Shown: positions 1 through 56,313 of the stretch, piece by piece | How the letters are laid out: every line of letters starts with the position of its first letter | How positions within the stretch are numbered: the first letter of the stretch is position 1 | DNA from: Sminthopsis crassicaudata | Taxonomy: Eukaryota | DNA length: 64,000 nucleotides | NCBI RefSeq assembly: GCF_048593235.1 | Contig: NC_133619.1 | Location: 637,772,558 to 637,836,557 of the forward strand | Direction of reading: 5' to 3' | Position numbers and translations under genes: made by a program | Notes under the pieces: generated by a model | Databases searched by the model: none | What the model saw: only the letters and a program-made list of their open reading frames with translations | What the model was told of the DNA's origin: nothing

Positions 1-706
1 ATAGGATGGAGGGAGCAAATATGGAGGAGGATTGGGGAAATGATAGGTAGGGAGATGGGAAAAGTTGGGAGAGGGAGAAAGAGGAAGAGGGAAAAGAGTT
101 AGGGGGAGAAGAAAGAGAGGGAAGGGATCAGAAGAAGAAGAGGCGGAACCAGAGAGAAAGATGAGGAGAGAGAAACAGAGACAAAGGGGGAAGAACAGAG
201 AGAACAGGGGATAGAAAGAGATAAGAGAAGACAGGAATGGAGGGGGAGGAGGACAGAAAAATGATGGGTCGGTCCAAAAAGGAAGTATAATATAGAGATG
301 GAGGAAGAGATGAGAATAGGCCGGGAGGGAGGGGAAGAGAAAGGTGCTGGGGAAGGGAAAAGAGACAGGGAAAATTGATCTAAATAGAGAAGGTAAGGGA
401 AAGATTTGGAGAAAATTTGGTAGGGTAAGAAAGGGGAGAAAGAAGAAGCTGAGAGTAAAAGATTGGAGGGGAGACGGAGGAAAAAGGGAGAGATGCGCTG
501 GAGAAGGAGAGCCGGCATAAAGAGATCCAAGGGAGAAAGAAGGGAAGGAAAAGGGGGCGTGTTGGAAGGAAAGGGGGAGATGTGCCGGGAAGAGGCCGCG
601 AGGAGGGAAGTTGCGCACCCGGGGCGAGCTCAGGAGCTGCTGCTTTTGTGGAACCACTGGCTACAAGAGCCGCTTGCTGTCAACCTCCCTTAGGCTGAAC
701 CTTGCT

Positions 707-839
707 CTTTCAGTTTCCCTTTCCTGGTACCCCCCTTCTTACCTGAAGACACCTGGCCCCGCCCCTTCCGCAGCGGGATTTTTGGAATCTGTTTCCACTT
801 TTCATACATCAGAGGATTATCCGGCTCTGCCGCTTAAAA
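707..839 (+). promoter_or_regulatory. Proximal promoter of IFNL copy 1: ISRE/IRF element, GC box, TATA-like TTAAAA
   Basis: ctttcAGTTTCccTTTCc at 707-724 reads GAAA-GG-GAAA-CT-GAAA on the - strand. A GC box ccccgcccc lies near 757-765 and ttaaaa at 834-839. Confidence 0.7.
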
Positions 840-893
840 GTGCAGGGATGAAGCGGTCTCCTGCATCACTTGTCACCTCACTTCTCCAAGGCC

Positions 894-2211
894 ATGAGGA
901 CTCCGCAGACTCTCCCGCTGCTGCTTTGTGCCCTGATGTCAGGGGCGATTTCGAAGTCCCTGGCCCCGACTCCCAGCAGCCTTCCCCCCGAGAGGAGCTT
1001 CCAGATCAGCCACTTCAAGTCTCTTTCGCCTCGGGAGCTGGAAACCTTCAAGGTGGCCCAGAATGCCTACGTGAGTTCCTGGAGTGATTTTTGTACCCCA
1101 CTCCTCCCATCCCTCACTTCCCGGGGTCTAACCTCGACCTCTTTTACTGCGCTCTAATATTATCTCTGGCACTGAGATCTAACCTTCATTTTTCCTTCTT
1201 GAACTCTGTCGCTTTCTCTGTTTCTAACCTCCGTCCTACATCGCAAGGACCTAGAAGAGTCACAAGCCTTTAACTCTTTCCTCTTCATCCCCCAAAGGAG
1301 AAGATCATGATTCAGACGGAGAGGAAATGTAGCTCCCGATTCTTCCACAGAAACTGGGACCTTCGGCAGCTGCCGGTAAGAAGGGGCGCTCCCCACCTGT
1401 CAGTCCCCCATCGCCTGTCTCCGAAATCTGTAGCCTCCCCATTTCTCTTCCCCCATCTGTCGGTCCTCCCCGTCTCCTTCCCCTGTCCCCTTCATCAGCC
1501 TCTCCCTCACATCGCCTCTCATCTCTCCCCTCACAGCCGTCCGTCCGGCCCCTGGTCTTACAGGCTGAGCTGAAATTGACTCTGAACGTCTTGAAAGCCG
1601 TAACCAAGCCTGAGCTGGACAGAGTTCTGGCTCAACCCCTACAAACGCTCAGCCACATCTACCAAGAGATCCAAAGCTGTGTGAGTACTGGAGGATGGGC
1701 GGGGCTCCCCTGGACCAATGGGCATGGAGCTGTTCCCTGTCTCTCAGGCGCCTCTGTCCCTTGCAGTGAGGCTGAGAGGCTGCAATACCTGGATTCCTCC
1801 CTCTCCCCCCACCCATCAAGTACCCGAGTTCCCCTTCTCTTTTATCAAGTCCATCCTCTCCCTACACAGGTTACTTCCAGGCCCTCTAAGGAACACAGGC
1901 CTCCAGGCCGCCTGAAGAATTGGCTGAACAAGCTCAGTGAGGCCAGAAAGGTGAGTCAGGAAAGCTTCAGATCTACGGAGGGCACCCGGGGATGGAGGGG
2001 AGGAGTCAGAGGGGACCCCAGAGCCTGGGCAGCAAGAGACTCTGCCCACCCCCCAGAGAGGAGGAGGACTCTGGATTGCCCAGAGGAACCTTACCCCTGT
2101 GTCTCTTCTCTTTAGGAGCCTTACAATTGCCTAGAAGCATCGATCATGCTCAATCTCTCCGGAATCCTGATCCAAGACCTCCGATGTGTAGCCTATGGGG
2201 ACCTCTGTTGA
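894..2211 (+). CDS. IFNL: Interferon lambda (type III IFN) copy 1, 5 exons, 191 aa; divergent A-type (Cys36Phe, helix F NLSGILI)
   Basis: Exons 894-1070, 1298-1375, 1537-1680, 1870-1950 and 2116-2211 have GT-AG phase-0 introns. The product has a hydrophobic signal peptide and the IFN-lambda motifs HFKSLSPREL, WDLRQL, AELKLTL..L, QPLQTLSHI, GRLKNWL..L.EA and CLEASIMLNL...DLRCVA.GDLC*. Exon sizes match the human IFNL architecture. Confidence 0.95.
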
Positions 2212-19503: not shown

Positions 19504-19640
19504 CTTTCAGTTTTCCTTTCCTGGTACCCGCCCTTCTTACCTGCAGACACCTGGCCCCGCCCCTTTCGCAGCGGGATTTTTGGAATCTGTTTCCACTTTT
19601 CATACATCAGGGGAATCTCCGGCTCGGCCGCTTAAAACTG
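19504..19640 (+). promoter_or_regulatory. Proximal promoter of IFNL copy 2: PRDIII-like IRF site, NF-kB site, TATA-like element
   Basis: ctttcagttttcctttcc at 19504-19521 contains GAAAACTGAAAG on the - strand. GGGAATCTCC at 19611-19620 fits GGGRNNYYCC, and ttaaaa follows. Identical motifs occur in copy 3 (27750-27767, 27857-27866), copy 4 (46554-46571, 46661-46670) and copy 5 (54800-54817, 54907-54916). Confidence 0.75.
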
Positions 19641-19691: not shown

Positions 19692-21014
19692 ATGAGGACT
19701 CCGCAGACTCTCTCGCTGCTGCTTTGTGCCCTGATGTCAGGGGCGATTTCGAAGTCCCTGGCCCCGACTCCCAGCAGCCTTCCCCCCGAGAGGAGCTGCC
19801 AGATCAGCCACTTCAAGTCTCTTTCGCCTCGGGAGCTGGAAACCTTCAAGGTGGCCCAGAATGCCTACGTGAGTTCCTGGAGTGATTTTTGTACCCCACT
19901 CCTCCCATCCCTCACTTCCCGGGGTCTAACCTCGATCTCTTTTACTGGGCTCTAATACTCATCTCTCGCACTGAGATCTAACCTTCATCCTTCCTTCTTG
20001 AGCTGTCGCTTTCTCTGTTCTAACCTCCGTCCTACATCGCAAGGATCTAGAAGGGTCACAAGCCTTTAACTCCTTCCTCTTCATCCCCCAAAGGAGAAGA
20101 TCATGATTCAGACGGAGAGGAAATGTAGCTCCCGATTCTTCCACAGAAACTGGGACCTTCGGCAGCTGCCGGTAAGAAGGGGCGCTCCCCACCTCTCAGT
20201 CCCCCATCGCCTGTCTCCGAAATCTGTAGCCTCCCCATTTCTCTTCCCCCATCTGTGGGTCCTCCCCGCCTTCCCCTGTCCCCTTCATTAGCCTCTCCCT
20301 CACATCGCCTCTCATCTCTCCCCTCACAGCCGTCCGTCCGGCCCCTGGTCTTACAGGCTGAGCTGAAATTGACTCTGGACGTCTTGAAAGCCGTAACCAA
20401 GCCTGAGCTGGACAGAGTTCTGGCTCAACCCCTACAAACGCTCAGCCACATCTACCAAGAGATCCAAAGCTGTGTGAGTACTGGAGGATGGGCGGGGCTC
20501 CCCTGGACCAATGGGCATGGAGCTGTTCCCTGTCTCTCAGGCGCCTCTGTCCCTTGCAGTGAGGCTGAGAGGCTGCAATACCTGGATTCCTCCCTCTCCC
20601 CCCACCCATCAAGTACCCGAGTTCCCCTTCTCTTTTATCAAGTCCACCCTCTCCCTACACAGGTTACTTCCAGGCCCTCTAAGGAACACAGGCCTCCAGG
20701 CCGCCTGAAGAATTGGCTGAACAAGCTCAGTGAGGCCAGAAAGGTGAGTCAGGAAAGCTTCAGATCTACGGAGGGCACCCGGGGATGGAGGGGAGAAGTC
20801 AGAGGGGACCCCAGAGCCTGGGCAGCAAGAGACTCTGCCCACCCCACCCCCACCCCGAGAGAGGAGCAGGACTCAGAATTCCCCAGAGGACCCTTACCCC
20901 TGTGTCTCTTCTCTTCAGGAGCCTCACAATTGCCTAGAAGCATCGATCATGCTCAATCTCTTCAGACTCCTGACCCAAGACCTCCGATGTGTAGCCTATG
21001 GGGACCTCTGTTGA
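19692..21014 (+). CDS. IFNL: Interferon lambda copy 2, 5 exons, 191 aa; canonical B-type
   Basis: Exons 19692-19868, 20094-20171, 20330-20473, 20663-20743 and 20919-21014 have GT-AG introns. It retains SCQISHF and the canonical helix F LNLFRLLTQDLRCVAYGDLC*. Confidence 0.96.
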
Positions 21015-27248: not shown

Positions 27249-27937
27249 GTCACTGGGTGGAGCGGCAGCTCAATGTCAGTGAATAGAGCATGGGCCTTGA
27301 AGTCAGGATAACCTGAGTTCAGATCCCGCCTCAGATACTTAACACTTCCTACCTGTGTGGGCTAGTCAATTAACCCCAAATGGCTCTGTAAAAAGGGAAA
27401 AGCTAATTAAGTCTTGAGTGGAGAAGAGGAAAGATGTGGGGGAAATTGATAGGGTAAGAAAGGGGAGAAGGAGGAAGCTGAGAGTAAAAGATTAGAGGGG
27501 AGACAGAGGAAAAAGGAAGAGATGCGTTGGAGGAGGAGTGCCGGCATAAAGAGATCCTAGGGAGAAAGAAGGGAAGGAAAAGGAGGAGGGGTGTGGGCAG
27601 GAATACCCTGGAGATCTGAAAAGGAAATCTGAAAGTCGGGAGGAGAGAAGGTGCGCCCCAACCTGAGCGAGCGCAGGAGCTGCTGCTTTTGTGGAATCAC
27701 TGGCTACAAGAGCCGCTTGCTGTCAGTCTGCCTTGGGCTGGACCTTGCTCTTTCAGTTTTCCTTTCCTGGTACCCGCCCTTCTTACCTGCAGACACCTGG
27801 CCCCGCCCCTTTCGCAGCGGGATTTTTGGAATCTGTTTCCACTTTTCATACATCAGGGGAATCTCCGGCTCTGCCGCTTAAAAGTGCAGGGATGAAGCGG
27901 TCTCCTGCATCACTTGTCACCTCACTTCTCCAAGGCC

Positions 27938-29264
27938 ATGAGGACTCCGCAGGCTCTCCCGCTGCTGCTTTGTGCCCTGATGTCAGGGGCAATTTCGAAG
28001 TCCCTGGCCCCGACTCCCAGCAGCCTTCCCCCCGAGAGGAGCTGCCAGATCAGCCACTTCAAGTCTCTTTCGCCTCGGGAGCTGGAAACCTTCAAGGTGG
28101 CCCAAAATGCCTACGTGAGTTCCTGGAGTAATTTTTGTACCCCACTCCTTCCATCCCTCACTTCCCGGGGTCTAACCTCGATCTCTTTTACTGGGCTCTA
28201 ATACTCATCTCTCGCACTGAGACCTAACCTTCATCCTTCCTTCTTGAGCTGTCGCTTTCTCTGTTTCTAACCTCCGTTCTACATCGCAAGGATCTAGAAG
28301 GGTCACAAGCCTTTAACTCCTTCCTCTTCATCCCCCAAAGGAGAAGATCATGATTCAGACGGAGAGGAAATGTAGCTCCCGATTCTTCCACAGAAACTGG
28401 GACCTTCGGCAGCTGCCGGTAAGAAGGGGCGCTCCCCACCTCTCAGTCCCCCATCGCCTGCCTCCGAAATCTGTAGCCTCCCCATTTCTCTTCCCCCATC
28501 TGTGGGTCCTCCCCGTCTCCTTCCCCTGTCCCCTTCATCAGCCTCTCCCTCACATCGCCTCTCATCTCTCTCCTCACAGCCGTCCGTCCGGCCCCTGGTC
28601 TTACAGGCTGAGCTGAAATTGACTCTGGACGTCTTGAAAGCCGTAACCAAGCCTGAGCTGGACAGAGTTCTGGCTCAACCCCTACAAACGCTCAGCCACA
28701 TCTACCAAGAGATCCAAAGCTGTGTGAGTACTGGAGGATGGGCGGGGCTCCCCTGGACCAATGGGCATGGAGCTGTTCCCTGTCTCTCAGGCGCCTCTGT
28801 CCCTTGCAGTGAGGCTGAGAGGCTGCAATACCTGGATTCCTCCCTCTCCCCCCACCCATCAAGTACCCGAGTTCCCCTTCTCTTTTATCAAGTCCACCCT
28901 CTCCCTACACAGGTTACTTCCAGGCCCTCTAAGGAACACAGGCCTCCAGGCCGCCTGAAGAATTGGCTGAACAAGCTCAGTGAGGCCAGAAAGGTGAGTC
29001 AGGAAAGCTTCAGATCTACGGAGGGCACCCGGGGATGGAGGGGAGGAGTCAGAGGGGACCCCAGAGCCTGGGCAGCAAGAGACTCTGCCCACCCCACCCC
29101 CACCCCGAGGGAGGAGCAGGACTCAGAATTCCCCAGAGGACCCTTACCCCTGTGTCTCTTCTCTTTAGGAGCCTCACAATTGCCTAGAAGCATCGATCAT
29201 GCTCAATCTCTCCGGAATCCTGATCCAAGACCTCCGATGTGTAGCCTATGGGGACCTCTGTTGA
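27938..29264 (+). CDS. IFNL: Interferon lambda copy 3, 5 exons, 191 aa; chimeric (exons 1-4 like copy 5, exon 5 like copy 1)
   Basis: Exons 27938-28114, 28341-28418, 28580-28723, 28913-28993 and 29169-29264. It has SCQISHF but helix F LNLSGILIQDL. Confidence 0.95.
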
Positions 29265-45389: not shown

Positions 45390-46741
45390 ATGGAGCTCTA
45401 ATTCAACAATATATTATCCCACAGCACTGTGATGATGTTTCTCCACACTCATGGGGATGTTGTTGATGAGCAAAGCTCCTCCCTCTTTTCCATCCTCAAA
45501 CAGTCAAACCCAAAGGCACTGTGTGGGCCACAGGTTAAATCTTTTCACTCTCAAGGATAGTAGAGATGCCATATCTGGACTCTAACAACATAGGCCCAGA
45601 TGTGCTAAAAGAGGGGAAGATATTTGGCTAAAGAGTCACTGGGTAGAGGGACAGCTCAATGGCAGTAGATAGAGCACCGGCCCTGAAGTGAGGATGACCT
45701 GAGTTAAAATCCAGCCTCAGACACTTATCACTTCCTAATTGACTCAAGTCAATTAATACCAAATGTAACTCCTGTGGACTGTGTGTGACACTTCGTGAGT
45801 GTGCCATGTGTCACCTGGATCACAGCAGCTGTGTAAGAAGTCTAAGTCATCAATTTTAGTGTCATCATCCTGAAAACCCCCAGAAAATCAGTGTCCCTTG
45901 ATTCATTGGGGGGGAGGGGAGAGGGAGGATCCAGCCTCAGACACTTACCACTTCCTACTTGTGTGGGCAAGTCAATTAATACCAAATGCCTCTGTAAAAA
46001 GGGAAAAGTTAATTAAGAATCTTGGGTAAAGCAGAGGAAAGATGTGGAGGAAATTGATAGGTTAAGAAAAGGGAGAAGGAGGAAGTTGAGAGTGAAAGAT
46101 TGGAAAGGAGACAGAGGAAAAAGAGAGAGATGCGCTGGAGGAGGAGGAGTGGCAGAGACAGATCCAAGGGAGAAAGTAGGGGGGGGGGAAAGTGGGGGTG
46201 ATGGGTACCGGGGAGGCGGTGTGTCCTCTTAGAGCAGCCAGCTGGATGCTGGGGTTGGGAGAGCCAGTCAAGTTATAACTCCCAGGTGCTGGAATCCCAT
46301 TGCCCACCCCTGCCCCTTATCTCTTCCTGGCCAGGTTTTCCCCTTCCCACAAGGGAAGAAAGAAGGGGCGAAAAAAAGGAGGGGATGTGTGGACAGGGAC
46401 AGGCTGGAGGTCTGAAAGGGGAGATGAGCCGGAAAGAGGCCAGGAGAAGGGAAGGTGCGCCCCAACCTGAGCGAGCGCAGGAGCTGCTGCTTTTGTGGAA
46501 CCACTGGCTACAAGAGCCGCTTGCTGTCAGTCTGCCTTGGGCTGGACCTTGCTCTTTCAGTTTTCCTTTCCTGGTACCCGCCCTTCTTACCTGCAGACAC
46601 CTGGCCCCGCCCCTTTCGCAGCGGGATTTTTGGAATCTGTTTCCACTTTTCATACATCAGGGGAATCTCCGGCTCGGCCGCTTAAAACTGCAGGGATGAA
46701 GCGGTCTCCTGCATCACTTGCCACCTCCCTTCTCCAAGGCC

Positions 46742-48064
46742 ATGAGGACTCCGCAGACTCTCTCGCTGCTGCTTTGTGCCCTGATGTCAGGGGCGATTTC
46801 GAAGTCCCTGGCCCCGACTCCCAGCAGCCTTCCCCCCGAGAGGAGCTGCCAGATCAGCCACTTCAAGTCTCTTTCGCCTCGGGAGCTGGAAACCTTCAAG
46901 GTGGCCCAGAATGCCTACGTGAGTTCCTGGAGTGATTTTTGTACCCCACTCCTCCCATCCCTCACTTCCCGGGGTCTAACCTCGATCTCTTTTACTGGGC
47001 TCTAATACTCATCTCTCGCACTGAGATCTAACCTTCATCCTTCCTTCTTGAGCTGTCGCTTTCTCTGTTCTAACCTCCGTCCTACATCGCAAGGATCTAG
47101 AAGGGTCACAAGCCTTTAACTCCTTCCTCTTCATCCCCCAAAGGAGAAGATCATGATTCAGACGGAGAGGAAATGTAGCTCCCGATTCTTCCACAGAAAC
47201 TGGGACCTTCGGCAGCTGCCGGTAAGAAGGGGCGCTCCCCACCTCTCAGTCCCCCATCGCCTGTCTCCGAAATCTGTAGCCTCCCCATTTCTCTTCCCCC
47301 ATCTGTGGGTCCTCCCCGCCTTCCCCTGTCCCCTTCATTAGCCTCTCCCTCACATCGCCTCTCATCTCTCCCCTCACAGCCGTCCGTCCGGCCCCTGGTC
47401 TTACAGGCTGAGCTGAAATTGACTCTGGACGTCTTGAAAGCCGTAACCAAGCCTGAGCTGGACAGAGTTCTGGCTCAACCCCTACAAACGCTCAGCCACA
47501 TCTACCAAGAGATCCAAAGCTGTGTGAGTACTGGAGGATGGGCGGGGCTCCCCTGGACCAATGGGCATGGAGCTGTTCCCTGTCTCTCAGGCGCCTCTGT
47601 CCCTTGCAGTGAGGCTGAGAGGCTGCAATACCTGGATTCCTCCCTCTCCCCCCACCCATCAAGTACCCGAGTTCCCCTTCTCTTTTATCAAGTCCACCCT
47701 CTCCCTACACAGGTTACTTCCAGGCCCTCTAAGGAACACAGGCCTCCAGGCCGCCTGAAGAATTGGCTGAACAAGCTCAGTGAGGCCAGAAAGGTGAGTC
47801 AGGAAAGCTTCAGATCTACGGAGGGCACCCGGGGATGGAGGGGAGAAGTCAGAGGGGACCCCAGAGCCTGGGCAGCAAGAGACTCTGCCCACCCCACCCC
47901 CACCCCGAGAGAGGAGCAGGACTCAGAATTCCCCAGAGGACCCTTACCCCTGTGTCTCTTCTCTTCAGGAGCCTCACAATTGCCTAGAAGCATCGATCAT
48001 GCTCAATCTCTTCAGACTCCTGACCCAAGACCTCCGATGTGTAGCCTATGGGGACCTCTGTTGA
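46742..48064 (+). CDS. IFNL: Interferon lambda copy 4, 5 exons, 191 aa; same as copy 2 in ORF translations and spot checks
   Basis: Exons 46742-46918, 47144-47221, 47380-47523, 47713-47793 and 47969-48064 (copy 2 + 27050). Confidence 0.96.
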
Positions 48065-54298: not shown

Positions 54299-54987
54299 GT
54301 CACTGGGTGGAGCGGCAGCTCAATGTCAGTGAATAGAGCATGGGCCTTGAAGTCAGGATAACCTGAGTTCAGATCCCGCCTCAGATACTTAACACTTCCT
54401 ACCTGTGTGGGCTAGTCAATTAACCCCAAATGGCTCTGTAAAAAGGGAAAAGCTAATTAAGTCTTGAGTGGAGAAGAGGAAAGATGTGGGGGAAATTGAT
54501 AGGGTAAGAAAGGGGAGAAGGAGGAAGCTGAGAGTAAAAGATTAGAGGGGAGACAGAGGAAAAAGGAAGAGATGCGTTGGAGGAGGAGTGCCGGCATAAA
54601 GAGATCCTAGGGAGAAAGAAGGGAAGGAAAAGGAGGAGGGGTGTGGGCAGGAATACCCTGGAGATCTGAAAAGGAAATCTGAAAGTCGGGAGGAGAGAAG
54701 GTGCGCCCCAACCTGAGCGAGCGCAGGAGCTGCTGCTTTTGTGGAATCACTGGCTACAAGAGCCGCTTGCTGTCAGTCTGCCTTGGGCTGGACCTTGCTC
54801 TTTCAGTTTTCCTTTCCTGGTACCCGCCCTTCTTACCTGCAGACACCTGGCCCCGCCCCTTTCGCAGCGGGATTTTTGGAATCTGTTTCCACTTTTCATA
54901 CATCAGGGGAATCTCCGGCTCTGCCGCTTAAAAGTGCAGGGATGAAGCGGTCTCCTGCATCACTTGTCACCTCACTTCTCCAAGGCC

Positions 54988-56313
54988 ATGAGGACTCCGC
55001 AGGCTCTCCCGCTGCTGCTTTGTGCCCTGATGTCAGGGGCAATTTCGAAGTCCCTGGCCCCGACTCCCAGCAGCCTTCCCCCCGAGAGGAACTGCCAGAT
55101 CAGCCACTTCAAGTCTCTTTCGCCTCGGGAGCTGGAAACCTTCAAGGTGGCCCAAAATGCCTACGTGAGTTCCTGGAGTAATTTTTGTACCCCACTCCTT
55201 CCATCCCTCACTTCCCGGGGTCTAACCTCGATCTCTTTTACTGGGCTCTAATACTCATCTCTCGCACTGAGACCTAACCTTCATCCTTCCTTCTTGAGCT
55301 GTCGCTTTCTCTGTTTCTAACCTCCGTTCTACATCGCAAGGATCTAGAAGGGTCACAAGCCTTTAACTCCTTCCTCTTCATCCCCCAAAGGAGAAGATCA
55401 TGATTCAGACGGAGAGGAAATGTAGCTCCCGATTCTTCCACAGAAACTGGGACCTTCGGCAGCTGCCGGTAAGAAGGGGCGCTCCCCACCTCTCAGTCCC
55501 CCATCGCCTGCCTCCGAAATCTGTAGCCTCCCCATTTCTCTTCCCCCATCTGTGGGTCCTCCCCGTCTCCTTCCCCTGTCCCCTTCATCAGCCTCTCCCT
55601 CACATCGCCTCTCATCTCTCTCCTCACAGCCGTCCGTCCGGCCCCTGGTCTTACAGGCTGAGCTGAAATTGACTCTGGACGTCTTGAAAGCCGTAACCAA
55701 GCCTGAGCTGGACAGAGTTCTGGCTCAACCCCTACAAACGCTCAGCCACATCTACCAAGAGATCCAAAGCTGTGTGAGTACTGGAGGATGGGCGGGGCTC
55801 CCCTGGACCAATGGGCATGGAGCTGTTCCCTGTCTCTCAGGCGCCTCTGTCCCTTGCAGTGAGGCTGAGAGGCTGCAATACCTGGATTCCTCCCTCTCCC
55901 CCCACCATCAAATACCCGAGTTCCCCTTCGCTTTTATCAAGTCCACCCTCTCCCTACACAGGTTACTTCCAGGCCCTCTAAGGAACACAGGCCTCCAGGC
56001 CGCCTGAAGAATTGGCTGAACAAGCTCAGTGAGGCCAGAAAGGTGAGTCAGGAAAGCTTCAGATCTACGGAGGGCACCCGGGGATGGAGGGGAGGAGTCA
56101 GAGGGGACCCCAGAGCCTGGGCAGCAAGAGACTCTGCCCACCCCACCCCCACCCCGAGGGAGGAGCAGGACTCAGAATTCCCCAGAGGACCCTTACCCCT
56201 GTGTCTCTTCTCTTCAGGAGCCTCACAATTGCCTAGAAGCAGCGATCATGCTCAATCTCTTCAGACTCCTGACCCAAGACCTCCGATGTGTAGCCTATGG
56301 GGACCTCTGTTGA
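54988..56313 (+). CDS. IFNL: Interferon lambda copy 5, 5 exons, 191 aa; SYCN-proximal gene with canonical helix F
   Basis: Exons 54988-55164, 55391-55468, 55630-55773, 55962-56042 and 56218-56313. It reads ERNCQISHF and EPHNCLEAAIMLNLFRLLTQDLRCVAYGDLC*. Confidence 0.96.

What the first reader, a model, noticed from the sequence alone, without database searches (positions are those of the whole stretch)
707..822. Reciprocal promoter switch in IFNL copy 1: ISRE gained, NF-kB site lost
Seen: copy 1 has AGTTTCCCTTTCC (712-724), a full ISRE consensus, where copies 2-5 have AGTTTTCCTTTCC (PRDIII-like GAAAACTGAAAG). Copies 2-5 carry a perfect kB site GGGAATCTCC, whereas copy 1 has AGGATTATCC (813-822): three substitutions inside the 10-mer with conserved flanks. 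Established: IFN-lambda promoters are driven by IRF3/7 plus NF-kB, and ISREs bind ISGF3. Inference: copy 1 behaves like a second-wave, interferon-induced gene rather than a primary virus-induced gene.
Basis: partly seen in the sequence, partly recalled or inferred. Interest (0 to 1): 0.7.

Follow-up and report, generated by a model that had tools for sequence, protein, structure and literature searches.

The report
Dunnart interferon-lambda promoter lost NF-kB site
One of the tandem interferon-lambda genes of the fat-tailed dunnart has lost the NF-kB site next to its start but keeps the ancestral interferon-regulatory-factor element, so the "gained ISRE" is old and the story is complementary decay among redundant gene copies, of modest interest.

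Summary
Copy 1 has AGTTTCCCTTTCC at 712-724 and AGGATTATCC at 813-822. Copies 2-5 have AGTTTTCCTTTCC and GGGAATCTCC.

Two corrections change the meaning:
- The five copies are only three independent promoters, because a recent 27,050-bp duplication made copy 2 equal to copy 4 and copy 3 equal to copy 5.
- Promoters fetched from Tasmanian devil, antechinus and koala show that copy 1's "ISRE" C is ancestral. Koala and one antechinus copy have the identical 13-mer. The T in copies 2-5 is the derived state, and it breaks the middle GAAA of a three-part IRF element.

The kB loss is derived and specific to copy 1. The 10-mer is invariant in 8 devil and antechinus promoters and still fits the consensus in koala. 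Copy 1 also lost a GC box by a one-base deletion and a conserved disulphide cysteine (Cys36Phe). It keeps an intronic kB-consensus motif.

I read this as complementary degeneration of the IRF and kB modules among redundant paralogues, not a gain-plus-loss switch. "Second-wave, ISGF3-driven" is untested, and the motif cannot separate IRF3/7 from ISGF3.

Caveats: no RNA data were available. Logan contigs could not confirm the kB variant independently, because they collapse the paralogues at that place.

The parts
705..724 (-). Three-part IRF element of copy 1. The minus strand reads GGAAAGGGAAACTGAAAGAG, with GAAA half-sites at 720-723, 714-717 and 708-711. It contains GAAANNGAAACT.
   Evidence: The 13-mer is identical in koala and antechinus copy d. 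The central GAAA is kept in every outgroup copy that still has this element: 3 devil, 3 antechinus and koala.
717..717 (+). C in copy 1 (ancestral) against T in copies 2-5 (derived). The T turns the central GAAA into AAAA and removes both strict GAAANNGAAA matches.
729..735 (+). Degenerate GC box. A one-base G deletion after 732 turns CCCGCCC into CCCCCC, and this is derived in copy 1.
   Evidence: G is present in copies 2-5, in 3 devil and 3 antechinus copies and in koala. Antechinus copy d has A and devil copy d lacks the stretch.
757..765 (+). Second GC box CCCCGCCCC, kept in copy 1. The derived T>C change at 768 lies just after it.
791..803 (-). Second IRF-like element. The minus strand reads GAAAAGTGGAAAC, it is conserved among dasyurids, and it is unchanged in copy 1.
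   Evidence: Alignments. Function is inferred from the motif only.
813..822 (+). Degenerate proximal kB site AGGATTATCC, at -81 from the ATG. It has three derived substitutions (813 G>A, 817 A>T, 819 C>A) and two mismatches to GGGRNWYYCC in every register.
   Evidence: No donor sequence exists in the window.
834..840 (+). TATA-like TTAAAAG, conserved in all copies and species.
894..2211 (+). Copy 1 coding region with five exons (894-1070, 1298-1375, 1537-1680, 1870-1950, 2116-2211). It is intact, encodes 191 aa, and equals NCBI XP_074158689.1, 'interferon lambda-3-like'.
   Evidence: Pfam PF15177 was precomputed.
999..1001 (+). Codon 36, TTC (Phe) in copy 1 against TGC (Cys) in the other copies. 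The Cys is present in all 12 other marsupial proteins aligned.
   Evidence: Position 1000 T/G is also seen.
1701..1710 (+). Intron 3 kB-consensus motif GGGGCTCCCC, kept in copy 1 and in all other copies.
   Evidence: It is also present as GGGGCTTCCC in two devil and three antechinus copies.
19509..19620 (+). Copy 2 promoter (identical to copy 4 at 46559-46670). It has the weakened IRF element AGTTTTCCTTTCC and the intact kB site GGGAATCTCC.
27755..27866 (+). Copy 3 promoter (identical to copy 5 at 54805-54916). It has the weakened IRF element and the intact kB site.

Best explanation
The window is the interferon-lambda-3-like tandem array of the fat-tailed dunnart.

Shown:
- The ancestral marsupial promoter, about 190 bp, carried a three-part IRF element at about -185, two GC boxes, a second IRF-like element, a kB site at -81 and a TATA-like box.
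- Copy 1 is the copy nearest IFNL4 according to an earlier scan note that I did not check.
- Copy 1 is an old duplicate. Its gene body and proximal promoter were later homogenised with the other copies by gene conversion.
- Copy 1 keeps the ancestral IRF element. On its own lineage it lost the proximal kB site (three substitutions in 7 bp) and one GC box (a 1-bp deletion).
- The other two promoter lineages (copies 2/4 and 3/5) keep the kB site. They carry a derived change that destroys the middle GAAA of the IRF element.

The pattern is therefore complementary degeneration of two modules of one virus-response promoter among redundant paralogues.

Inferred: copy 1 transcription would rest on IRFs (IRF3, IRF7, IRF1) with little NF-kB synergy at the promoter. 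That resembles IRF-only interferon-alpha genes, so induction would be weaker or more dependent on IRF7.

Not shown: any difference in expression.
For: Identity:
- The window is 100% identical to GCA_048593235.1 of Sminthopsis crassicaudata over 12,211 bp.
- NCBI models all five genes as interferon lambda-3-like.

Polarity:
- Alignments with 4 devil, 4 antechinus and 1 koala promoter show 717C is ancestral.
- The same alignments show 732delG, 746, 768, 813, 817 and 819 are derived in copy 1.

kB status:
- No kB match with <=1 mismatch exists in copy 1's proximal 300 bp.
- The other copies each have exactly one, at -81.

IRF element:
- Copy 1 alone has GAAANNGAAACT and two overlapping GAAANNGAAA matches.

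Old duplicate with later conversion:
- Copy 1's distal upstream is 81% identical to copy 3's.
- The gene body shows 0-9 differences per 100 bp.

Module loss is common in these arrays:
- Devil copy d lost about 125 bp holding the IRF element and GC boxes but keeps kB.
- Antechinus copy a is broken inside the IRF element and keeps kB.

Literature:
- IFN-lambda promoters bind IRF1/3/7 and NF-kB, and paralogue-specific architectures exist in humans (PMC8066714; PMC13288807; PMC6893776).
Against: - There are no expression or binding data. No RNA run held the gene.
- The kB variant is not confirmed outside the assembly.
- Copy 1 keeps an intronic kB-consensus motif. It also has one perfect distal kB match at -2341, so NF-kB input may persist.
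- In human IFN-lambda1 reporters, mutating a single IRF or kB site did not abolish activation by RIG-I (PMC6893776). The effect of copy 1's loss may therefore be small.
- The substitution count on the copy 1 promoter lineage (6) against the other lineage (2) is not significantly different by my own arithmetic.
Confidence: 0.6

Rival explanations
1. Neutral decay. Copy 1 is a redundant paralogue under relaxed constraint and on its way to becoming a pseudogene. The kB and GC-box losses have no adaptive or regulatory meaning.
For: - Copy 1 alone lost Cys36, which is present in the 12 other marsupial proteins aligned. From memory, this Cys is the partner of a conserved disulphide in human IFN-lambda3.
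- It also carries an altered helix F.
- Other dasyurid arrays hold copies with broken promoters, such as devil copy d, whose product is also truncated to 169 aa.
Against: - The reading frame and all splice sites are intact.
- The ancestral IRF element, the second GC box, the TATA-like box and the flanks of the kB site are untouched.
- Gene conversion keeps overwriting the gene, which hides any signal of relaxed constraint.
Confidence: 0.22
2. One reading: copy 1 gained an ISGF3-type ISRE, lost kB, and is a second-wave, interferon-induced gene.
For: - The copy 1 element fits GAAANNGAAACT, a form enriched at IRF9-dominant sites, and 15 of 16 positions of the detailed ISGF3 consensus WBVGGAAANNGAAACT.
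- The proximal kB site is gone.
Against: - The element is ancestral, not gained. Any ISGF3 response would then be an old property of marsupial IFNL3-like promoters.
- It is three-part and begins GGAAA, both features reported to favour IRF3, and no variant is exclusive.
- No GAS motif lies nearby.
Confidence: 0.1
3. Assembly or consensus error at 813-819 in a region of five near-identical paralogues.
For: None of four runs laid as contigs showed the copy 1 kB letters.
Against: - The contigs collapse paralogues here. Run X1 lacks the copy 2/4 version, and X4, X5 and X7 lack the copy 3/5 version, though both exist. Absence is therefore uninformative.
- The variant sequence occurs nowhere else in the window, whereas mis-polishing would copy a paralogue.
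- Neighbouring copy 1-specific letters at 653-798 are confirmed in two studies.
Confidence: 0.07

Closest known systems
Paralogue-specific promoter architecture of human IFNL1, IFNL2/3 and IFNL4
   Same: Tandem IFN-lambda paralogues differ in which IRF and NF-kB sites they carry, and therefore in how they are induced (PMC13288807; PMC8066714).
   Different: Here the paralogues are marsupial-specific duplicates. The difference is a few point changes inside an otherwise homogenised 190-bp promoter, and no expression data exist.
Interferon-alpha genes (IRF-only) versus interferon-beta (IRF plus NF-kB enhanceosome)
   Same: Copy 1 would resemble an IRF-only interferon promoter, and copies 2-5 the IRF-plus-kB type (PMC8066714, and general knowledge).
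   Different: Copy 1 still has an intronic kB-consensus motif. The IRF and kB sites lie about 100 bp apart rather than adjacent, and no ATF2/c-Jun site was looked for.
Duplication-degeneration-complementation (subfunctionalisation of regulatory modules)
   Same: Complementary degenerative changes lie in different modules of duplicated promoters.
   Different: Partition of expression is not shown. Gene conversion is still active, and copy 1 also carries protein changes that suggest decay or a new function.
PRDIII-I element of the interferon-beta promoter
   Same: Copies 2-5 read GAAAACTGAAAG on the minus strand, which I recall as matching PRDIII.
   Different: In the dunnart it arose by weakening a stronger three-part element.

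Membership tests
NF-kB site | Fits GGGRNWYYCC | tested here: not met
   Copy 1's AGGATTATCC has 2 mismatches in every register. Copies 2-5 and 8 devil and antechinus promoters have 0 mismatches, and koala has 0.
NF-kB site | Binds RELA/p50 | not testable with these tools
   Needs EMSA or CUT&RUN.
ISRE (ISGF3 type) | GAAANNGAAACT core | tested here: met
   Copy 1's minus strand reads GAAAGGGAAACT. It is absent from copies 2-5.
ISRE (ISGF3 type) | Detailed consensus WBVGGAAANNGAAACT (PMC6954429) | tested here: not met
   15 of 16 positions fit. The first position is C, not W (read; consensus).
ISRE (ISGF3 type) | Newly gained in copy 1 | tested here: not met
   The 13-mer is identical in koala and antechinus copy d. 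C is present in 7 of 7 outgroup copies that have the position.
Tripartite ISRE / IRF element | Three GAAA half-sites spaced by 2 nt | tested here: met
   The copy 1 sequence is GAAAGGGAAACTGAAA. Devil has GAAAGGGAAATGGAAA and antechinus b/c has GAGAGGGAAACGGAAA.
Interferon lambda (Pfam PF15177, IL28A) | Protein matches the family, with a five-exon gene next to SYCN | tested here: met
   Precomputed PF15177 on P0003 and on the genes called in the loci. Exon structure. SYCN lies downstream in devil and koala.
Subfunctionalised duplicates (DDC) | Complementary loss of regulatory modules | tested here: met
   kB is lost in copy 1 only, and the central IRF half-site is lost in copies 2-5 only.
Subfunctionalised duplicates (DDC) | Partitioned expression | not testable with these tools
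   No RNA holder was found.

The most novel reading that the evidence does not exclude
Dasyurid marsupials have split the virus-response promoter of their expanded IFN-lambda array into an IRF-driven copy without the proximal kB site and kB-retaining copies with a weakened IRF element. The IRF-driven copy also has a changed receptor-binding helix and a lost disulphide. It would act as a separately timed, weaker or modulatory ligand, giving a marsupial parallel to the eutherian IFNL1 versus IFNL2/3 division of labour.
Probability: 0.12. Interest if true: 0.6.

Novelty: new member of a known kind. Interest (0 to 1): 0.3.

Why it matters
If the kB loss changes induction, the dunnart would give an independent, recent example of how tandem interferon genes divide regulatory inputs. 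The dunnart is a laboratory marsupial. The divergent sites sit in an almost identical background, which suits site-swap reporters. As it stands, the finding is a small cis-regulatory difference with no functional data. Its most useful outcome is the corrected direction of change.

Tried and rejected
- I looked for a donor of the copy 1 kB variant, which would indicate microconversion, and found none in the window.
- I tried to confirm the variant and find expression in public runs. Only Logan contigs were served. They collapse the paralogues, and no RNA holder exists.
- I tried wallaby, brushtail possum and sugar glider as further outgroups. Their genes were located but no DNA was served.
- I looked for one-to-one orthology of copy 1 with a devil or antechinus copy using unconverted flanks. 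All are about equally distant at 79-84%, so orthology is unresolved.
- I checked for compensating kB sites. There is one perfect distal match at -2341, which is at chance level (my arithmetic gives about 0.7 expected per 6 kb on both strands), and one intronic match shared by all copies.
- A relative-rate comparison of promoter changes (6 against 2) is not significant.
- No PWM scoring was done, because no matrices were available offline.
One search used a by-reference open frame spanning exons 3-4. All later steps used database protein ids.
- No human sequence was used.

Full report
**What is in the window**

The window holds five plus-strand, five-exon interferon-lambda genes, with ATGs at 894, 19692, 27938, 46742 and 54988. 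The first 12,211 bases of the window are identical to the part of locus L006 that overlaps it. L006 is from Sminthopsis crassicaudata assembly GCA_048593235.1. NCBI names all five products "interferon lambda-3-like", and copy 1 is XP_074158689.1.

All five reading frames and splice sites are intact. One search used a by-reference open frame spanning exons 3-4, and later steps used database protein ids.

**Check of the observation**

The letters are as described.
- AGTTTCCCTTTCC lies at 712-724 in copy 1.
- AGTTTTCCTTTCC occurs in the other four copies.
- GGGAATCTCC occurs four times, at -81 of copies 2-5.
- Copy 1 has AGGATTATCC at 813-822 between identical flanks.
- Both motifs are far more frequent than in shuffled sequence.

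The four "other" copies are only two independent promoters. A 27,050-bp segmental duplication made copy 2 equal to copy 4 and copy 3 equal to copy 5, with no differences in the promoter. The duplication junction lies inside the gene, so copy 3 has a copy 5-type 5' part and a copy 1-type 3' part.

**Direction of the changes**

I fetched outgroup promoters: four from Tasmanian devil (L001, L004), four from antechinus (L002, L003) and one from koala (L005).

In the alignments, the C at 717 is present in all seven outgroup copies that have this position. Koala and antechinus copy d carry the identical 13-mer. The "ISRE" is therefore ancestral to Australian marsupials, and the T of copies 2-5 is the novelty.

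On the minus strand the ancestral element reads GGAAAGGGAAACTGAAAG, three GAAA half-sites. The T turns the middle one into AAAA and removes both strict GAAANNGAAA matches.

The kB 10-mer is invariant in all eight devil and antechinus promoters. In koala it reads GGGATTCTCC, which still fits GGGRNWYYCC. Copy 1's version is therefore a derived loss. Two of its three substitutions break the consensus, and no register with fewer than two mismatches exists in copy 1's proximal 300 bp.

Copy 1 has three more derived changes:
- a 1-bp deletion that destroys a conserved GC box, after position 732;
- a substitution at 746;
- a substitution at 768.

**Is the kB cluster more than chance?**

Six changes are derived on the copy 1 lineage in 204 bp, and three fall in the kB 10-mer. 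For the pre-named site the simulation gives p of about 0.002. For any 10-bp window it gives about 0.09.

Two of the three changes are transversions within 7 bp. From general knowledge, a single multinucleotide mutation is a plausible origin. No donor sequence exists in the window.

**History of copy 1**

Copy 1's distal upstream (-3057 to -1697) is only 81% identical to the matching part of copy 3. It is about equally distant from the devil and antechinus copies. The gene body shows only 0-9 differences per 100 bp.

Copy 1 is therefore an old duplicate whose gene and proximal promoter were later homogenised by gene conversion. The 7-bp island of difference inside a homogenised tract is best read as a later mutation.

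**Independent support from reads**

Only Logan contigs were served, and no RNA holder was found.

The copy 1-specific stretch 653-798, which includes 717C, the deletion, 746A and 768C, was found:
- exactly in run X1;
- in X5 and X7, from another study, with three other letters (692G, 698G, 761T).

No contig carried the copy 1 kB letters. Each run shows just one paralogue version at that place: X1 lacks the copy 2/4 version, and X4, X5 and X7 lack the copy 3/5 version. The absence therefore has no weight. The kB variant rests on the assembly.

**How it most likely works**

IFN-lambda promoters bind IRF1, IRF3, IRF7 and NF-kB (PMC8066714). The site called ISRE in the IFN-lambda1 promoter is used as the IRF3 site, and single-site mutants were still activated by RIG-I (PMC6893776).

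ChIP-seq work reported the following (PMC6954429):
- GAAANNGAAACT is enriched at IRF9-dominant sites.
- GGAAANNGAAA, the tripartite form and nearby kB motifs favour IRF3.
- No ISRE variant is exclusive to one factor.

The copy 1 element has features of both classes, so sequence cannot decide between them.

My reading is complementary degeneration among redundant paralogues. Copy 1 is an IRF-dependent promoter with reduced NF-kB input. Copies 2-5 are kB-retaining promoters with a weakened IRF element.

This fits a wider pattern in dasyurid arrays:
- Devil copy d lost about 125 bp holding the IRF element and both GC boxes but keeps kB.
- Antechinus copy a is broken inside the IRF element and keeps kB.

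Two things temper "kB lost":
- All five dunnart copies, copy 1 included, share an intron 3 kB-consensus motif (1701-1710). It is also present in two devil and three antechinus copies.
- Copy 1 has one perfect distal match at -2341, which is at chance level.

**Is copy 1 decaying?**

Copy 1 alone has Phe in place of Cys36, which is Cys in the 12 other marsupial proteins aligned. From memory, this is one partner of a conserved disulphide in human IFN-lambda3. Copy 1 also shares a variant helix F with copy 3. These features support either decay or a new function, and the data cannot separate the two.

**Comparison with what is known**

Different IRF and kB site content among IFN-lambda paralogues is established for human IFNL1, IFNL2/3 and IFNL4 (PMC13288807). 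For marsupials I found only a gene inventory of the devil, which reported no interferon expression (PMC4662006). No paper held both the dunnart and interferon lambda.

This is therefore a new example of a known kind of divergence.

**Verdict**

- Interest is modest, at 0.3.

Noticed in passing
window 999-1001: Copy 1 alone encodes Phe instead of Cys at residue 36. The Cys is present in all 12 other marsupial IFNL3-like proteins aligned and probably forms a disulphide.
   Followed up: partly
window 1701-1710, 20494-20503, 28744-28753, 47544-47553, 55794-55803: A kB-consensus motif, GGGGCTCCCC, lies in intron 3 of all five copies. It is present as GGGGCTTCCC at the same place in two devil and three antechinus copies, and absent in koala.
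   Followed up: partly
L004:9880-9920: Devil copy d, the copy next to SYCN with a 169-aa product, has a deletion of about 125 bp. It removes the IRF element and both GC boxes but keeps the kB site and the TATA-like box.
   Followed up: partly
L002:880-900: The antechinus copy a promoter is broken inside the IRF element. Unrelated sequence lies upstream, and the kB site is kept.
   Followed up: no
L006:7660-7669 (-2341 from copy 1 ATG, outside the window): One perfect kB consensus, GGGGCTTTCC, and three one-mismatch matches lie between -3106 and -2053 upstream of copy 1. The region is 81% similar to copy 3's upstream. The count is at chance level, and it may relate to an earlier scan note on LTR-borne kB sites.
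   Followed up: partly
window 688-798: Runs X5 and X7 carry a second copy 1-type promoter haplotype (692G, 698G, 761T, with 717C, the deletion, 746A and 768C). Run X4 showed no copy 1-type contig here.
   Followed up: no
window about 2079-29150 and 29150-56200: A 27,050-bp tandem segmental duplication is near 100% identical, with its junction inside an IFNL gene. Copy 3 is therefore a chimera of a copy 5-type 5' part and a copy 1-type 3' part.
   Followed up: partly
window 2152-2172 and 29205-29225: Helix F reads NLSGILIQ in copies 1 and 3, against NLFRLLTQ in copies 2, 4 and 5 and in most of the other marsupial proteins aligned (antechinus has NLFRLLLQ).
   Followed up: no
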